From Lama glama (Eukaryota): a stretch of 64,000 bases of DNA. The number at the start of each line of letters is the position of its first letter. Position 1 is the first letter of the stretch. This document shows, piece by piece, positions 10,016-32,936 of this stretch. Both the position numbers and the translations under genes were made by a program. The notes under the pieces are model-generated. The model saw only the letters and a program-made list of their open reading frames with translations. It had not been told where the DNA came from and searched no databases. The stretch covers positions 62,930,001-62,994,000 of the forward strand of contig CM052838.1 of assembly GCA_028534125.1 (NCBI GenBank), in the 5' to 3' direction.

Positions 10016-11967
10016 TTTTTCCAGTTTTATTGAGAAATAATTGACATCCATCACTATATAAGTTAAAGGTGTACAGCATGATGGTTTGATTTACGTATAT
10101 TGTGAAATGATTACCACAATAGCTAACATCCATCTTCTCACATACGTACAATAAAAAGAAAAGAAAAGGAAACGAATTAAGGAAAAAGTTTCTCCCTGTG
10201 ATCAGAACACTTAGGGTTTACTAACCTCCCTATGTACCATACAGCGGTGCTAACCATGTCATCCCGTGGTGCATTCCATCCGTAGCACTCATTTATCTTC
10301 TAGCTAGAAGTTTGTACCTTTTGACCACCTTTCTCCAATTCCCTCTTGCCCCCAGTGCCCTGCCTTCAGTACCCGTAAGATTGATCTCTTTTTCTATGAG
10401 TTTTGTTTCAAGACTCTACATATAAATAGAATCATACAGTGTTTGTCTTTCTTTGTCTGGCTTATTTCACTTAGCAGAATGCCTTCAAGGTCCATCCGTG
10501 TTGGTGCAAATGGCAGGATTTCCTCATTTTTATGGCTGAATAATATCCTATTGTATACTGATACTACAGCTTCTTGGTCCATTCACCCACTGACGGACAC
10601 TTAGGTTGCTCCCATGTCTTGGCTATTAGTAATGCTGCTGTGAACATAGGGGTGCAGATGTCTCCTTGAGTTAGTGTTACACTGTCTTTGGATGCATTCC
10701 CAGAAGTGAAGATGCTGGGTCATATGGTGGTTCTACTTCTAAGTTTTTGAGGACCTTCCACACTTTTCCGCAGTGGCTGCACCAATTTACATTCCCACAA
10801 ACAGTGTGCCAGAGTTTCCTTTCCTCCACATCCCTGCCAAGACTTACCTTTTTGATAACAGCCATTCTGAGAGGTGTGAAGTGCCATCTCACTGTGGTTT
10901 TGATGTGCGTTTCCCTAATGACTAGTGATGCTGAGCATCTTTTCAGGTACCTGTTGGCCTTCGCTATATCCTGTGTGGAGAGATGTCTTCTCAGGTCCAT
11001 TGCCTGTTTTTCAATTGGAGTTTGGGGGTTTTTGTTTTTTTTCGCTATTGAAGTGTATGGGTTCTTTATACGAGTTGTGTTGAATATTGACCCCAGTTGG
11101 ATATGTGGTCTACAAATCTCTTTCCCACTCTGTGGGCTCCTTTCACTTTGCTGATGGTTTGCTTTGCTGTCGTCCATTGTGTTTACTGTTGCTTTTGTGG
11201 CTTGTGCCTTAGGTGTCATCGCCAGGAAGTCACTGCCAGGACCCAGGTCAAGGAGCTCTGCTCCTAGGTTTCCTTTTAGGAATTTCATGGTTTGGGGTCT
11301 TACACGTAAGTCTTCACCCATTCTGAATTAGTTTTAGTGAGTGCTGTACAATACGGGTCCAGCTTAATTCTTTGACATGTGAATATCCGATTACCCCAGC
11401 TCCGGTTACTGAAGAGGCTGTCCTTCCTCCGTGGAGCATGCTTGGCTCCCTTGTCACATGCTGGTTGGCCGTGTATGTTTGGGGCTATTTCTGGGCTCTC
11501 TTCTGTTCCGCTGGCCTGTCTGTCTGTTTTCATGCCGCTTCCACACTGTCCTGTGCCTGCAGCTTTGTGGTGCAGCCTGCCATCGGCAGGCGGGATGCTT
11601 CTTGCTTTGTTCTTCTTTGGAAGGATTTCTTCAGCTATTCGGAGTCGATTGTGGTTCCACACACATTAGAGGGACAGTTTTTCCGTTTCGGTAAAAAATG
11701 CCGCTGGGATCTTGATAGGGATTGCATCAAATCTATAGATGGCTTTTGATAACGTTGACTTTCTGACAAAGTAAATTCCCCCAATCCATGAACAGAAGCT
11801 GCCTTTCCATCTCTGTGTGCCTTCCTCGGTACCTTTCATCAGTGTCTTGCGGTTTCCAGCGGACAGATCTTTCACCTCTTTAGGCTTATTCCTAAGTATC
11901 TTACTGCTTTTGAGCTATTGTAAGTGGGATCAATTTATTTATTTCTTTTTCAGAAATTTCATCATTA
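10016..11967 (-). mobile_element. 5'-truncated L1 (L1MA9-like): ORF2 C-terminus plus 3'UTR
   Basis: Minus-strand ORFs 11666-11875, 11300-11662, 10677-11321 and 10394-10582 translate as L1 ORF2 (CSWIG..KAIYRFDAIPIKIP, SLFxxxSWGN, KRCSASLVIRE..IKTTVRWHFTP, WCSHCGK); poly-T at 10014-10020; candidate TSD gaaaagtctt (10006-10015) / ggaaagtgtt (11968-11977). Confidence 0.95.
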
Positions 11968-13354
11968 GGAAAGTGTTAGCAATACGACTGAGGGCTGCGC
12001 TTTCAGTGCACACACTTTGCTGCCATCCAGTCAGCCTTGCGCAGGTGCGGACGGTCTGGCCTCCTAGCTGGAGCGCCCCAGTCCATCTTCCTGCTTCAGT
12101 GTGGAATGTTGATCTGCCTTTCAACTCAGTTGGGCTGCAGGTGATGCTCCGTTTGCCTGTTCATCCTCCTCGTGGTGGCGAAATGCAAATGAAGTCGTCC
12201 CTGGTGCATCAGAGGCCTTGTAGCCACTGATGCCGTTCTCTCCCGGAGCCAGGGTCTCCCCAAACCCCAGTACCAGGGAGACGGGCTCAGGAGTGGTGCG
12301 GGCCGTGCAGGGGCCTGGCTGGTGGGCGGGACGCCGTTTCTACGAGGGTGCGTTTGTTACCAAATTAGACTGTCAGCCAGTGTCCGTGAAACTCCAGGAC
12401 AGAAGAGAAGGGATTTTTTTTTTAAAGCAGACAGAAAGTTAGAAAACAATTAGTATGCACTAATTGAGAATAATAATAATAACATTTTGAATTTGTGCCT
12501 AGAATGAGAGTTAAGGTGGGCCCCTTGCCAAACCTGGTATCTCTGGCTGCTGTCTTCAGATTGTCACGCATCCATTTTGAGAGATGACAGTGGTGCTCTG
12601 TTTTGAAACATTAATTGCTGACATTTTTTTTTGAGAGATTTTTGTAGCCTCACTTGGGCCTCTAATTTCACACAACATCTGCTATTGATGTCATCGATTT
12701 AAGTATTTAGAAACGAGAGAGGAACATAAGTGAAGAAAATAAAAATATACGTACCTCATTGCTATGGAGGGACAAGGGTTTCACTTGGACATTGGATACC
12801 TTGAGCCATCGTGTGGGTAATCAAATGCGTGCCACACTTTGCCAAGTATCCAGGGCTGTCACATCTGCTGTCACCACCTGTGATCATTTTCTTCCTCTTT
12901 TGCACTAAATAATCAATTACAAGATTCTGGGTTTTTCTCCCCTCACTCATTTATTACTGGCTCAAGACCTTGCTTCTGGTGGTGCCAGGGTGAGAGCACG
13001 AGAGCCTTTCTGCTTCAGAGGACAGGGTGAAGGATTTGTGAATCATTATTAGCTGAGCTCCGGGTGAACACAGCCATTGACAAGGTTCTTGAATATCTGT
13101 TGGGAGAATGGTTTCAAAAATGTAGAAACTCATAAAACTTAATGCTGATGAAGGCTTAGGGTTGAGCCAGGTTCTCTGAGCTACTGTGGGGAGTGTAACA
13201 TTGTCACGGACCTTCTGGACATAATTTGGTATATGCACCTCTTTAATGTTTAACTCAATATTTCCTGTTCTAGAAAGCTGTCCTAAGAAAATGTGCAGCA
13301 CCTAGCACATTCTAGAGTCTCAAACTCAGTTAACTGAATGAAAATGTAAAGAAT

Positions 13355-13380
13355 TATATATATATGTTACATAATTGTTT

Positions 13381-13427
<47 letters not shown>

Positions 13428-13428
13428 G
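13355..13428. repeat. (TA)n-rich microsatellite
   Basis: Read directly. Confidence 0.9.
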
Positions 13429-13429
13429 C

Positions 13430-13725
13430 ATTAACCCCTGCCAAAGGAAGCAACCTAAGTGTTCAGTAAAAGGGGAATCATTACATGATAATGGAGTATT
13501 ATGCAGTCATGAAAAAGAGCCATACTGAGTTTCTAGTGGGGCTGATACAATTTCCAATGGTACTGTACTGATAAAACGTTAAGTTAAAAAGGAAGAGTAT
13601 ACAACTCTGTGTACTGTAACCTCAAGATACATGTGCATGGAAGAGAGAAGAGTGGTGAAATCACAGATGATTCTTATTCTTTAGACCATTCTGTACTTTA
13701 AAAAATTTCCACAGTGAGCACACGG
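13430..13725 (+). mobile_element. Old L1 (L1ME-like) 3' fragment
   Basis: ggaagcaacctaagtgttcagtaaaaggggaat..ataatggagtattatgcagtcatgaaaaag; ends tttaaaaaatttccacagtgagca. Confidence 0.7.
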
Positions 13726-13741
13726 TCTATAGGTGTGTATT

Positions 13742-13769
13742 TGTGTGTGTGTGTGTGTGTGTGTGTGTG
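13742..13769. repeat. (TG)14 microsatellite
   Basis: Read directly. Confidence 0.98.
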
Positions 13770-16700
13770 ATAACATAACATTTTAAACATACATGCAGAA
13801 AGTAAAATACTCTTCACAAAGTTCTCATTATACTGGGCAGTGTAAAAGATATCAAGTCCTCTGTTATTTTCAGGTCTGTCCTTATTAACAGCTGCTAGAT
13901 TTTTCTTAGACAGAAGGTAGGCACCGTAGCTGATGGTCCTTGTGATATACACCTGATCCTAGTTGCATGTAAGGCAAATAGGAAATAGGATCAAAATACT
14001 GTCTGGTCCTGTTGGGTATCTTAACAGGTGCAGCCTGAGGTCAGGTTGGGCCAGCAGAGCCATTCACAGAAGTCTTTGGCATAAGATAAACTTGGGATGG
14101 AAGCTATCTCTGATGTAGGGGGGTGTGCTCCAACCTTAGGTGTTGAACATTGTCAGGAAGCTCCTCATAGATGCTACGTATCAGGCTCCACCCTGACCTA
14201 CTGCATCATTACCTGCTATCAGTAAGATCCCCGGGGAGCCCTGAGGATAATGCCACTGAAGAAGGTGCCTTGGGAGGATGGATGGCAGGACTTGGAACCC
14301 TGGGAAGAGTGATGTGTGTGCAGCCCCTCTTTCTGAGGAGGGGAGTTGGCGGTCACGGTGATTGCCTTTCTGTAGGCGGCAGGAATAAGCTTCACCAGGT
14401 GTGTGCAACCTGCATCAGACCTGTTGGGGGGATGTGCGATTCAGAGTTCACTGAGTTGGTCATGAAGTGAAGTCTGGTTGAGGGGACCCAGGGGAGAGCC
14501 GAATAATCCTGAACATCCCTTCGAGGGGTGTGTGGCTCCAGAACCCGAGCTGCAAAGGCGAGCGCCTCAGAGGGCGGAGCCGCTGGAATTTGTTGGCGGG
14601 CCTGCTTGCCTCAGGATGATGAAACTGGCTCAGCTTCATATTTTTTTTCTAAAGAAAGAAGTTGACAAACTCTGCCCAGTGGGAGTTTCATGTGCCCATC
14701 AGCCAGGAGTCAGCTGAGCCCTCATCCCTTTAATTTGAGGTTTCTCCTTAGACAGCCCCTGTCGGATGCCCCGTGTGTCTGACCACATGCAGCAAACCCA
14801 TCTGTGGATCCAAGGCAAGCTGGGGGGTAGCCGCCACCTGTCCTCAGACCCGTGCTGGTTCCAGTAGACGAAAGCCAGAGAACAAGAACGGTCTGCGAGC
14901 CTTTTACAAGGAATGAGCGGACTCCATCTAAGGGCAGAACGTCAGCGATACTAAGAGCTTCCTTTTCGCTTTTGACATTATTTTTTTCTTTTCCGATGAT
15001 GACTTAGTTTTCTTTGAATGTTCCTGGCTCAAAAAGAGTGTGAGTTAGGTACCTACCCTCTTTGACTTTTTGCTCAGGTCTGTCTGAGGGGCCTGTGTTT
15101 TTAAAGAAGTTGATGTTTCATCCTGTTGGAGACCCGGTCCAGGCTCCGGGCACAGAACCGCTTGCTCGGGGAGCGACGTGTCCACATTCCTTCCTAGAAG
15201 GTTAACTTGTGTCAATAGTGTTCTAACTCAGCCCTCACCAAGTACACCCACCACCACCCTCACCCCGGACATCATCAGCCAGAAACCCCTCCAGGGCAAG
15301 CTGAAACTTGACCTGTTTCTAACTGACTTAAACAACAGAAGCCACACACTGTCTTCCATTAACTCTTGGAATCTAGAATCAGCAGCGGGGGTGGGGTGTC
15401 GCTGGAACCCAAAGCGGTATCAGTAGTTCTGGCCCAAACACTCCTCCACCCCATGCTTGCTGGAAGTCTGAACCCCTCCAGGAGGACAGCACATCAGGGC
15501 TGGGGGCTCGAGGCCAGCTTTGTTGGCCACCCCTCCCAGTTCTCGCTTCTGCCCTCCCTGAGTCACTCTGGTTTGGACGGGGTCACTATCCTGCACACAG
15601 CTGTCTCCATCTGCACCTCCTTTCCCCTCATCTCTGCTCACTCTCCCCACCCAGCCTCCCCGGAGCCTCCGACTCCGCCCACAGGGACTCACAGATGCCT
15701 TCTAGTGCCCGTGATCATACGGCTCTCACCCTGGGACACTACTGTTAGCAAGGAATTACCTGCGACACTTCGCCCCTGACCAAAAAGGAAAAAAAAGAAG
15801 TTTGAATTAGTGGTTGTCACCTGGGCCTGGGGCCTGGAAGCTGTGAATCCTGCAGGCCTGGCCGTGGCCTGTCGGAGCCCAGCGAAGTGAGCAGTGGTTC
15901 ATGCCTGACTCTGCCTGGAGCTGGGCTGGCTGGGCGCGGCAAGGTCTGGGTCCCCGACCGCATTGGACCGTCCCAGGTGTGGATGAGCGGACCCGCTGTC
16001 CACAAGGGCTGTGTGTGGTTCCCGTAGGTCTGGAGGGAGACCTGGATCCCGGACGGACGCGGCCTCTGCATTTAGGCTTTGGTTTTCCGAGGGCAGGGCC
16101 GGCGGTCTCACTGGCACCTTTGCCTGATGCTCAGAGCTGCTCATAACCTTTTCCAGTCACACAGGCTTCTGTGTGGGAGGCGCTCCTCATCCCTCAGTGT
16201 CCCCGTCACAGAGAATAATGTCACGGCACAGCACACCGCCCCGGGCAGAGCCAGGAGCCCGCCCGGCGTTTCAGAGCCTGGCTCCTGCCGGTCCCACCCC
16301 TTCTCCCTGGGTAGGCCTTTGTTACCCCGGGGTCTCCATTTCCATTGTGCTCGTGGCACAGACAGAAGAAGGGAAGACCTGTAACTTGAATCACAAACAC
16401 CTTGACATTTTGTTCCAGCGTGTCCCCGAGGCTCATGCCAGGGAACAAGACAGCCCGTTCGGATATCTTAGCAGGTGGCGTCTGCGGTGCCTGAGGGCCC
16501 GCGTTGTGTGGGAGCAGAGATGGATTCCGCTGGTGGCTGTTAGGGCCTGTCCTCAGAACTAGGTCCTGCGGATAAAGAGGGGGACTAACAGCAAGTGAGG
16601 CGGACACATGAGTGCTTAGTGTGCGATTCGTAAGTGTGCGTAAAAATGCTCCGGAAATATAAGGGGAAGCAAACTGACTCAGGCAGGAGGTGCAGAGGCG

Positions 16701-18339: not shown

Positions 18340-18640
18340 TGACATCGCCCAGCCGACTAATTACGGCTGAGACGGCAAGTACCACAGCGCTACCTGACTC
18401 TGTCTGTGTTCCCACTTGTCTAACATCATCCGTATTCCATTGAACATAATCACGTAAGGTAGAATGTGTTTAAACTGCTAAAGGACTGGGTCATTGACTT
18501 TAACAATGTTCTCAATACAACATTTAATTACTGTGCAAGCTCTTCTTCAAGGGCGCATTTCCAGGGATCCGCTGGAATTATGTTAAGTGTACTTCGGCAG
18601 ACAGTAATGCATGAAACAGCTCTTTCATAATTTAGGAGAA
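18340..18640. promoter_or_regulatory. Candidate conserved non-coding element
   Basis: Repeat-free AT-shifted island in GC-rich context; CTAATTAC, TTTAATTAC, AACAAT (SOX), TGTTTAAAC, TAATGCAT, TCATAATTT. Confidence 0.4.
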
Positions 18641-32773: not shown

Positions 32774-32936
32774 NNNNNNNNNNNNNNNNNNNNNNNNNNN
32801 NNNNNNNNNNNNNNNNNNNNNNNNNNNNNNNNNNNNNNNNNNNNNNNNNNNNNNNNNNNNNNNNNNNNNNNNNNNNNNNNNNNNNNNNNNNNNNNNNNNN
32901 NNNNNNNNNNNNNNNNNNNNNNNNNNNNNNNNNNNN
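32774..32936. other. Assembly gap (163 N)
   Basis: Run of N. Confidence 1.

What the first reader, a model, noticed from the sequence alone, without database searches (positions are those of the whole stretch)
12520..13175. Catalytic core of a Kolobok-type DNA transposase preserved as a fossil in a mammalian genome
Seen: on the minus strand, short peptides in shifting frames occur in this order: RTWLNPKP (13175), LSMAVFTRSS (13083), HHQKQGLEPVINE (12984), GRKTQNLVIDYLVQKRKKMITGGDSRCDSPGYLAKCGTH (12941-12825), KVSNVQV..HSNE (to 12755), INSRCCVKLEAQVRLQKSL (from 12689), NVSN*CFKTEHHCHLSKWMRDNLK (TEHH at 12601), DTR/LARG (12541-12520). Known (recalled consensus): Kolobok transposases of fish, amphibians and invertebrates read RxWxSQP..LSAAxxFxGxS..HQxxYLxPxIxxxWxxxQ..GGDxRxDSPGHSAKYGxY..KVxDxQLVQSNEVxxSxxMExEG..VTDRHxQIxKWxRE..DxWHxxKG. 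The three catalytic Asp lie in GD, TD and DxWH. Eight motifs match in order and roughly correct spacing. As far as I know, Kolobok is represented in mammals only by short non-coding relics such as UCON29. Inference: this is either a very old autonomous Kolobok copy or a once-domesticated transposase gene that was later lost. Only one 62-aa ORF in the track shows the signature clearly.
Basis: partly seen in the sequence, partly recalled or inferred. Interest (0 to 1): 0.92.

Follow-up and report, generated by a model that had tools for sequence, protein, structure and literature searches.

The report
Dead Kolobok transposase gene remnant
This stretch is a real but broken, single-copy leftover of the cutting-enzyme gene of a Kolobok "jumping gene", shared with other mammal-like genomes; it is a rare kind of fossil in mammals, though not the first reported.

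Summary
The core observation holds. On the minus strand, window 12984-12528 (weakly to ~12394) aligns colinearly, across about four frameshifts, with positions 251-377 of a 629-position profile of THAP+DDE transposases. Those proteins carry the Kolobok signatures: GDxRxDSPG, TDRH, DxWH, then an H2CH zinc finger. Scores far exceed controls: z 17-19 for the ORF, 7.6-9 downstream, 4.6-5 upstream, and 31 against shuffles.

Two of the eight motifs (RTWLNPKP, LSMAVFTRSS) are not above chance. The last motif lies in another frame (YQVWQGA). DxWH is not a third catalytic Asp. No THAP, C-terminal zinc finger or catalytic E survives here.

The locus looks single-copy and vertically inherited. About 20 short ORF clusters from other genomes carry it. 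A metagenome contig (L001) holds a distant ortholog, 69% identical in DNA, with a colinear conserved anchor 5.5 kb away. L001 still has TDRH and WHGAK.

Differences between window and L001 favour synonymous sites (omega 0.39; permutation p=0.02). That hints at coding constraint after the split. A shared in-frame TAA in a 65/72-nt insert without a canonical acceptor argues against it.

Frith 2022 already lists one Kolobok-T2 protein fossil in human; whether it is this locus is untested. This scan has not noted it on other DNA.

The parts
12946..12984 (-). HHQKQGLEPVINE, matching profile 251-263 (consensus kiqkkYLfPvIne), the segment just upstream of the first catalytic Asp. It is separated from the next block by a 1-nt frameshift at 12945. 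That frameshift is absent in another species' ORF (P0004).
   Evidence: Alignment. Controls z 4.6-5, 0/462. Shuffles z 9.3. tblastn QKQYLFPVVNE-type hits. P0004 reads WHHLKQGLEPVINEQGRETQNLV in one frame.
12762..12950 (-). 62-aa ORF. Residues 3-52 match profile 264-312 and include the invariant GDxRxDSPG box (GGDSRCDSPGYLAK). The first catalytic Asp codon is 12872-12870.
   Evidence: phmmer against 1.84e9 proteins. tblastn best E 1.9e-10. hmmsearch E 2.9e-7, the only significant piece among 3,566 window pieces. Controls z 17-19.
12752..12792 (-). NVQV-KPLS-LHSNEV in another frame, matching profile 314-323 (fqvvQvNEV). The frameshift near 12793-12795 is specific to this lineage. The extra 21 nt (GTGAAACCCTTGTCCCTCCAT, 12781-12761) sit exactly where many Kolobok genes have an intron.
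   Evidence: Alignment. P0268 (94% identical) reads LITRMMALKVFNAQVKPLSLHSNEV in one frame. Intron at profile 320 in 16 of 44 other Kolobok loci. Run-on ORFs ending after LVQV.
12687..12751 (-). 65-nt insert with no counterpart in the profile. It starts GTACGT. Homology resumes at ATC AAT AGC (I N S) with no AG before it. An insert is present at the same place in L001 (72 nt, partly alignable) and its sequence is read through by other species' ORFs. It contains a shared TAA in the downstream reading frame. Intron or ancient insertion: unresolved.
   Evidence: ORFs P0004, P0269 and P0271 read through it. No Kolobok locus has an intron at profile 322-324.
12528..12686 (-). Block matching profile 324-377: NSRCCVKLEAQVRLQKSLKKK, then, after a frameshift, TEHHCHLSKWMR, where the second catalytic Asp is now Glu (12598-12596). 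After another frameshift comes YQVW(QGA), the decayed C/DxxH signature (Q 12536-12534, W 12530-12528).
   Evidence: Alignment. Controls z 7.6-9, 0/272. Shuffles z 8.1. The ortholog L001 still reads TDRHCQVSEWMRGH and WHGAK.
12394..12518 (-). Weak possible continuation (profile 378-402: HLNSHSRHKFK .. SVCFKKKIPSLLSW). The DNA alignment with the ortholog ends at 12383.
   Evidence: Lenient alignment only. Controls p about 0.02-0.035. DNA alignment.
13914..14003 (-). Tentative: DSILILFPICLTCN*DQVYITRTISYGAYL, resembling the CxxC region N-terminal of the core (profile 160-188). It is colinear and on the same strand, but about 740 nt too far upstream.
   Evidence: Several weak tblastn hits, E 3.6-5. 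Controls z about 2, with 5-10 of 234 reaching it. Not seen in L001.

Best explanation
Window 12984-12394 (minus strand) is a non-functional remnant of a Kolobok transposase gene. It covers about 130-150 codons of the RNase-H-like catalytic core, from about 35 residues before the first catalytic Asp to just past the C/DxxH signature.

The intact ancestor would have had three working parts:
- an N-terminal THAP domain that binds the transposon ends;
- a DDE active site that cuts and pastes DNA at TTAA sites;
- a zinc finger between DxxH and the catalytic Glu.

What survives here cannot do any of this. It has about four frameshifts and several stops. The second Asp is Glu, and DxxH reads QVWQ. 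No THAP, zinc finger or catalytic Glu is left.

The remnant sits at a single locus that was inherited vertically. Related genomes carry the same piece with their own private lesions.

Shown: the homology, the colinearity, the lesions, and presence in other genomes with one syntenic anchor. Inferred: that the source was either an autonomous element or a host-retained (domesticated) copy, and when it died.
For: Homology:
- ORF against transposase fragments at database scale.
- tblastn E down to 1.9e-10.
- Profile alignment z 17-19, 7.6-9 and 4.6-5 for three independent blocks, and z 31 against shuffles.
- Family spacing reproduced.

The reference family is Kolobok-like:
- 600-840 aa proteins with THAP (PF05485) plus a core weakly hitting PF20700, in fish, amphioxus, sea urchins, ticks, corals and sponge.
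- Invariant GD.R.DSPG, TDRH and D.WH.
- An HxxxxxH...CxH finger after DxWH. This finger is the feature that separates Kolobok from MuDR, P and hAT, and it is listed as H2CH in Xenopus Kolobok.

Single locus, vertical descent:
- Only one copy in 64 kb.
- About 20 ORF clusters from other genomes, each looking like one locus.
- L001 aligns at 69% over window 12998-12383, with a colinear conserved anchor at 18446-18618.
- L001 retains TDRH and WHGAK.
Against: - No piece reaches any Pfam model on its own.
- The Kolobok-specific zinc finger, THAP domain, catalytic E, terminal repeats and TTAA duplication are all undetectable in the window. Superfamily assignment of the fossil therefore rests on sequence similarity of the core to proteins that do have those features.
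- Pfam calls the relatives' core 'Mutator-like'.
- Orthology of L001 rests on one good anchor plus two weak colinear hits. The alignable DNA does not run past the transposase-derived part.
- The organisms are unknown.
Confidence: 0.9

Rival explanations
1. Refinement A: the gene was already dead when the sampled lineages split, and it has decayed neutrally since. On this reading it is an ordinary old transposon or pseudogene relic, kept recognisable only by luck and by lying in a slowly changing, repeat-poor region.
For: - All sampled lineages share a TAA, in the downstream reading frame, inside the 65/72-nt insert. The insert has no AG where homology resumes (GAC|ATC in most, GCG|ATC in L001), so it is hard to read as an intron.
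- No other Kolobok locus has an intron there.
- Catalytic residues vary freely among lineages (GGD to GGG, GGN, GGA; CDSPG to CDGPG, CDDPG).
- N- and C-terminal parts are missing in both species.
Against: Differences between the window and L001 are enriched at synonymous and third codon positions in the Kolobok frame only: omega 0.39 against 1.06 and 1.15 in the other frames; codon positions 25/21/40; permutation p 0.022. All frameshifts seen are lineage-specific. The inferred common ancestor had about 95 open codons with near-consensus motifs.
Confidence: 0.55
2. Refinement B: it is the unitary pseudogene of a host-retained (domesticated) Kolobok transposase gene. That gene stayed under protein-coding selection after the two sampled lineages diverged, and was then lost independently in each.
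For: - Omega 0.39 in the transposase frame, in both halves (0.36 and 0.41), with bootstrap CI 0.21-0.68 and a third-position excess at p 0.008.
- Single copy with a syntenic anchor.
- Private, non-shared frameshifts.
- The invariant motifs were intact in the inferred ancestor and partly still are in L001.
- Kolobok transposases were domesticated many times in Xenopus.
Against: - The permutation null that keeps base and CpG mutability has mean omega 0.68, giving only p 0.022.
- There is ascertainment bias towards copies that kept their amino acids.
- The shared in-frame TAA in the insert needs a non-canonical intron.
- No intact copy, no THAP and no C-terminus were found.
Confidence: 0.3
3. Refinement C: the relic has been exapted as a conserved non-coding element (for example an enhancer), like the pre-amniote protein fossils described by Frith 2022. 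DNA-level selection would then explain its preservation.
For: - It is one of only two alignable islands in 7 kb between the window and L001. The other is a TAAT-rich element with 84-88% identity.
- A 60-nt core is 87% identical.
- The 64-kb window is almost free of repeats.
- Frith reports one pre-amniote Kolobok-T2 fossil in human.
Against: - Overall identity is only 69%, with 52-55% stretches and many indels.
- The core motif varies among closer relatives.
- DNA-level selection does not predict an excess of changes at third codon positions.
Confidence: 0.1
4. The resemblance is due to chance, or to a different DDE superfamily (MuDR/MULE, P or hAT) rather than Kolobok.
For: Pfam names the relatives' core 'Mutator-like transposase' (PF20700), with weak MULE hits. 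The window pieces hit no Pfam model. phmmer also returned spurious bacterial repeat proteins at E 1e-13.
Against: - Three separate blocks each beat all or nearly all real-sequence controls.
- The ortholog restores TDRH and WH.AK.
- The relatives combine THAP, C/DxxH and a zinc finger between DxxH and E, which the literature gives as Kolobok-specific among these superfamilies.
Confidence: 0.03

Closest known systems
Kolobok superfamily transposases of the THAP/T2 type (Xenopus XKol, Kolobok-1_XT, fish and invertebrate families; Hikosaka & Konishi 2018, Kojima & Bao 2022)
   Same: The core sequence is the same: YLxPxI, GDxRxDSPGxxAKYGxY, VQ.NEV, TDRH..KW.RE and DxWH, in the same order and spacing.
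   Different: Only about a fifth of the protein survives here, and it is frame-broken. No THAP, H2CH finger, catalytic E, terminal repeats or TTAA duplication can be seen. It is single-copy rather than a repeat family.
[quoted passage not shown]
   Same: The same kind of object: a short, degraded stretch matching a Kolobok transposase, found in a mammal and missed by RepeatMasker.
   Different: Its coordinates are not in the text, so identity with this locus is untested. That fossil is dated before the amniote split; no non-mammalian counterpart was examined here.
UCON29 (the only Kolobok entry among human Repbase repeats; Kojima 2018)
   Same: An ancient Kolobok trace in mammals.
   Different: UCON29 is a non-coding, multi-copy consensus. 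This is a protein-coding remnant at one locus.
ATF7IP Crypton relic and THAP9 (transposase genes kept by hosts and lost in some lineages)
   Same: They are models for refinement B: a transposase ORF kept by the host for a long time and later decayed in particular lineages.
   Different: Those cases have intact copies in some species and demonstrated constraint or activity. Here no intact copy is known, and the constraint signal is weak (p about 0.02).

Membership tests
Kolobok superfamily transposase (origin of the relic) | First catalytic Asp inside the conserved GDxRxDSPG box | tested here: met
   GGDSRCDSPGYLAK, Asp at 12872-12870. The box is invariant in 18/18 relatives.
Kolobok superfamily transposase (origin of the relic) | Second catalytic Asp (TDRH) about 66 residues downstream | tested here: met
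   The position is found at the right spacing. The window reads TEHH (Asp to Glu), and the ortholog L001 reads TDRH.
Kolobok superfamily transposase (origin of the relic) | C/DxxH signature between the second Asp and the catalytic Glu | tested here: met
   Found at about 21-22 codons after D2. The window reads QVWQ (decayed), and L001 reads (I)-WHGAK. The signature is defined.
Kolobok superfamily transposase (origin of the relic) | Zinc finger (H2CH) between C/DxxH and the catalytic Glu, absent in MuDR, P and hAT | tested here: inconclusive
   Not detectable in the window (z about 0). Suggestive in L001 (VTNCH..C..SH..KKKKWL; z 3.1-4.4, with 1-4 of 394 controls reaching it). Clearly present in the intact relatives.
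Kolobok superfamily transposase (origin of the relic) | Third catalytic residue (Glu) and C-terminal region | tested here: not met
   No significant match anywhere in the window. An L1-like insertion and GC-rich DNA follow the relic.
Kolobok superfamily transposase (origin of the relic) | N-terminal THAP domain (C2CH, PWF, AVPTIF) | tested here: not met
   A THAP profile built from 19 relatives scores below the control mean on 13900-15000. A lost domain does not argue against the origin.
Kolobok superfamily transposase (origin of the relic) | TTAA target-site duplication and 5'-RR..YY-3' terminal inverted repeats | not testable with these tools
   The ends of the element are unknown, and no Repbase/Dfam library is on hand.
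Domesticated (host-retained) transposase gene, now a unitary pseudogene | Single copy at a syntenic locus in several species | tested here: met
   One copy in the window. One ORF type per cluster across about 20 clusters. L001 has a colinear conserved anchor. Genome-wide copy number was not countable.
Domesticated (host-retained) transposase gene, now a unitary pseudogene | Purifying selection on the reading frame (dN/dS below 1) between orthologs | tested here: inconclusive
   Omega 0.39 against 1.06/1.15 in the other frames. Third-position excess p 0.008. Permutation p 0.022. Countered by a shared in-frame TAA in the insert.
Domesticated (host-retained) transposase gene, now a unitary pseudogene | Intact ORF or expression in at least some species | not tested
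MuDR/MULE transposase (Pfam PF20700/PF10551 naming) | Match to the Pfam model above its cut-off, with no zinc finger between D2 and E | tested here: not met
   Window pieces give no Pfam hit at E up to 10. Relatives hit PF20700 only weakly (19-38 bits) and carry the zinc finger that MuDR lacks.

The most novel reading that the evidence does not exclude
Mammals once had a host-retained Kolobok transposase gene, and none is currently known. It stayed under coding selection after major eutherian lineages split and was then lost independently. It could therefore still be intact in some mammals or in other vertebrates. The closest intact exon-like ORFs, P0013 and P0016, come from unidentified eukaryotic contigs.
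Probability: 0.3. Interest if true: 0.75.

Novelty: new member of a known kind. Interest (0 to 1): 0.45.

Why it matters
Kolobok is regarded as essentially absent from mammals. Repbase lists only the non-coding UCON29, and one protein fossil has been reported in human.

A well-supported remnant of the catalytic core at a syntenic locus shows that a coding Kolobok transposase gene was carried into, or persisted within, the mammalian lineage. Its motifs were near consensus in the common ancestor of distant species.

If the weak synonymous-site signal holds up, this would be the first Kolobok-derived catalytic-domain gene retained by mammals, lost repeatedly. That would add to the catalogue of domesticated transposases.

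If it does not hold up, this is one more old protein fossil in a repeat-poor region rich in conserved elements. It would still be useful as an age marker, but ordinary.

Tried and rejected
- Pfam on the four window ORF pieces gave nothing.
- hmmsearch of all stop-to-stop pieces found only the 62-aa ORF, so I wrote a frameshift-aware profile-to-DNA aligner. Its lenient settings over-extend, so only control-calibrated blocks are reported.
- The giant phmmer hits P0003, P0007 and P0014 are bacterial Ig-repeat or ankyrin proteins and are spurious.
- The THAP remnant at 13900-15000 is rejected.
- No C-terminal half was found anywhere in the window.
- The anchored extension to LSMAVFTRSS and RTWLNPKP is rejected.
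- No intra-window repeats overlap 11000-15000. Rfam found nothing in 10600-16000.
- Pfam on L1-like ORFs and on the ten longest window ORFs gave nothing.
- The Hikosaka and Frith supplements hold no usable sequences or coordinates.
- The ESM Atlas gave only generic PF20700 look-alikes.
- The look-up of sequencing runs returned coded organisms only. The RNA runs hold at most 0.18 of the sampled words.
- I take protein cluster P0011/P0030 (443 contigs) for human or primate DNA. I fetched no contig of it and made no analysis of it. One script listing printed its members in passing.
- I do not take L001 for human. Its ORF is of the P0005/P0020 type, not the cluster-8 type.
Pieces were searched apart, and joins exist only inside the local alignment.
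- The 65-nt insert as an intron is not settled. It has a GT start but no AG where homology resumes, and it lies at no conserved Kolobok intron position.

Full report
**What is there.**
The 62-aa ORF at 12950-12762 contains ITGGDSRCDSPGYLAKCGTH. On its own it finds no Pfam family.

A phmmer scan of 1.84 billion representative proteins gave two groups of hits:
- Short ORFs 59-89% identical, which turned out to be the same locus in other genomes.
- Fragments 41-45% identical that read GGD(G/A)R(A/C)DSPGYSAKYGTYSL..KI.D..LVQ (E 1.8e-5 to 9.5e-5), one of them from the tick Ixodes scapularis.

Three high-ranking giants are bacterial Ig-repeat or ankyrin proteins and are spurious.

**Which family.**
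Starting from the tick fragment, two word-index searches recovered several hundred proteins. Many are 600-840 aa, from ticks, sea urchins, amphioxus, teleosts, corals, an oyster and a sponge. They have an N-terminal THAP domain (PF05485) and a core that weakly matches Pfam PF20700 'Mutator-like transposase'.

In 18 aligned members the residues GD.R.DSPG, TDRH and D.WH are invariant. TDRH lies 67 residues after the GD.R.DSPG box and D.WH 89 residues after it. An H..H...C.H finger follows.

The literature ties these features to Kolobok:
- Hikosaka & Konishi 2018 list DDE, H2CH, C2CH/PWF/AVPTIF (THAP) as the conserved motifs of Kolobok transposases.
- Kojima & Bao 2022 state that Kolobok shares C/DxxH with hAT, P, MuDR and Dada, but alone has a zinc finger between that signature and the catalytic Glu.

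I therefore treat the reference family as Kolobok despite the Pfam name.

**Extent and significance.**
No tool offered a frameshift-aware alignment, so I wrote one (profile log-odds against codons, with frameshift and DNA-gap states). I calibrated it on real controls, meaning all other same-length segments of the window on both strands. The profile has 629 positions and was built from 61 full-length proteins.

| Block | Window | z against controls | Controls reaching it |
|---|---|---|---|
| ORF block | 12950-12762 | 17-19 | 0/624 |
| Downstream (SNEV, TDRH, DxWH) | 12830-12400 | 7.6-9 | 0/272 |
| HHQKQGLEPVINE | 12984-12946 | 4.6-5 | 0/462 |

Against 300 dinucleotide shuffles the whole core gives z 30.8.

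The strict alignment joins profile 251-377 to window 12984-12528. Its lesions and features are:
- a 1-nt frameshift at 12945;
- a 3-nt insertion;
- a frameshift near 12794;
- a 12-nt and a 65-nt insert around SNEV;
- two further frameshifts, one before TEHH and one before YQVW.

The first Asp is kept. The second is Glu.

A further 125 nt down to 12394 may belong (p 0.02-0.035). A CxxC-like piece at 14003-13914 is only suggestive (p 0.02-0.04).

Not supported:
- RTWLNPKP and LSMAVFTRSS;
- a THAP remnant upstream;
- any C-terminal part in the window.

**Other genomes.**
About 20 clusters of short ORFs from public assemblies carry the same sequence. Each aligns to the Kolobok profile.

They show that the window's lesions are private. 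P0004 reads WHHLKQGLEPVINEQGRETQNLV... straight through the 12945 frameshift. P0268 (94% identical) reads ...LITRMMALKVFNAQVKPLSLHSNEV through the 12794 one. Several lineages have replaced the catalytic Asp (GGG, GGN, GGA).

One cluster seen on 443 contigs I take for human or primate contamination. I left it alone.

**The ortholog L001.**
The one metagenome scan returned mostly invertebrate Kolobok genes. It also returned L001 (contig Ga0065711_1004342).
- Its DNA aligns to window 12998-12383 at 69% identity. Identity is 87% over 12894-12835 and 77% over 12612-12554.
- 3.6 kb further along in L001 (5.5 kb in the window) a TAAT-rich element aligns colinearly to 18446-18618, at 84-88% in its core.
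- The rest of the 7 kb does not align.

L001 is also a pseudogene, with two stops and private frameshifts. It is better preserved, scoring 191 against 132. It keeps GGDGRCDSPGYLAKYGVYLITDLDAS in frame, TDRHCQVSEWMRGH and WHGAK, and perhaps part of the zinc finger (z 3.1-4.4). The common ancestor therefore had the invariant Kolobok residues.

**Transposon relic or lost host gene?**
I took the 112-114 codons that can be compared between the window and L001.

| Frame | Nei-Gojobori omega | Sd | Nd |
|---|---|---|---|
| Kolobok frame | 0.39 | 27.8 | 56.2 |
| Other frame 1 | 1.06 | 17.0 | 62.0 |
| Other frame 2 | 1.15 | 13.8 | 62.2 |

- Both halves agree, at 0.36 and 0.41.
- Differences fall 25/21/40 on codon positions 1/2/3 (p 0.008).
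- The bootstrap interval is 0.21-0.68.
- A permutation null that keeps base and CpG mutability has mean omega 0.68 and gives p 0.022.

This hints that the frame was still under selection after the two lineages split.

Against it stands the insert after SNE(V). It is 65 nt in the window and 72 nt in L001, and ORFs of other lineages read through the same sequence. It contains a TAA in the downstream frame in all of them, and it has no AG where homology resumes. In 44 other Kolobok loci the conserved introns lie at profile 320 and 381, not at 322-324.

At position 320 the mammalian copies instead carry a 21-nt in-frame, GT-initiated, pyrimidine-rich segment.

I therefore rate 'dead before the split' at about 0.55, 'host gene lost independently' at about 0.3 and 'exapted non-coding element' at about 0.1.

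**Known or new.**
- Kojima 2018 lists UCON29 as the only Kolobok repeat in human.
- Hikosaka & Konishi found no domesticated Kolobok orthologs outside Xenopus.
- Frith 2022 reports exactly one 'Kolobok-T2' protein fossil in human. It is older than the amniote split and new to RepeatMasker, but the text gives no coordinates.

So the kind of object is published. Whether this locus is that one is open. This scan's index holds no other Kolobok note.

**Limits.**
- The organism names are coded, so 'mammal' is not verified and neutral divergence could not be calibrated.
- N runs at 2044-2231 and 32774-32936 were left untouched.
Pieces were searched apart.

**Verdict.**
This is a real, well-supported Kolobok transposase core fossil, non-functional today, at a single vertically inherited locus. 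It is a new member of a known kind, with an unresolved and testable possibility that it is the remains of a host-retained gene.

Noticed in passing
window 18446-18618 (and L001:1269-1433): A TAAT-rich non-coding element about 5.5 kb from the relic is 84-88% identical in its core to the distant ortholog contig. It is far better conserved than its surroundings and looks like a conserved regulatory element. It served as the synteny anchor.
   Followed up: partly
whole window: The 64 kb are almost free of interspersed repeats. No long ORF hits Pfam. This is typical of conserved, gene-poor regions.
   Followed up: partly
window 12761-12781 (minus strand): A 21-nt in-frame segment (GTGAAACCCTTGTCCCTCCAT) lies between VQ and SNEV, exactly where 16 of 44 other Kolobok loci have an 84-318-nt intron. 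L001 has a 21-nt segment at the same place. It may be a collapsed intron.
   Followed up: partly
loci L002-L059 (marine metagenome contigs): Many intact-looking Kolobok transposase genes share two intron positions (profile 320, before SNEV, and 381, after DvWHlaK). Others are intronless. This explains the many database ORFs that run on after 'LVQV'.
   Followed up: partly
window about 10600-11990 (minus strand): ORFs here resemble the C-terminal part of LINE-1 ORF2 (judged from memory; no Pfam hit). The insertion abuts the 3' side of the relic and may have removed or displaced its C-terminal half.
   Followed up: partly
window 13381-13427 and 13733-13769: There are (TA)n and (GT)n microsatellites between the core and the tentative CxxC piece.
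   Followed up: no
one search hit list: phmmer of a 62-aa query gave E 1e-13 to bacterial 4,600-5,200-aa Ig-repeat proteins through 10-14 weak repeated stretches. This is a reminder that summed multi-domain scores on giant repeat proteins can outrank true homologs.
   Followed up: yes
window 13909-14149: This is the place of another first-stage note (THAP-like remnant). A THAP profile from 19 Kolobok proteins scores below the control mean here. The weak similarity that exists at 14003-13914 is to the CxxC region after THAP, not to THAP.
   Followed up: yes
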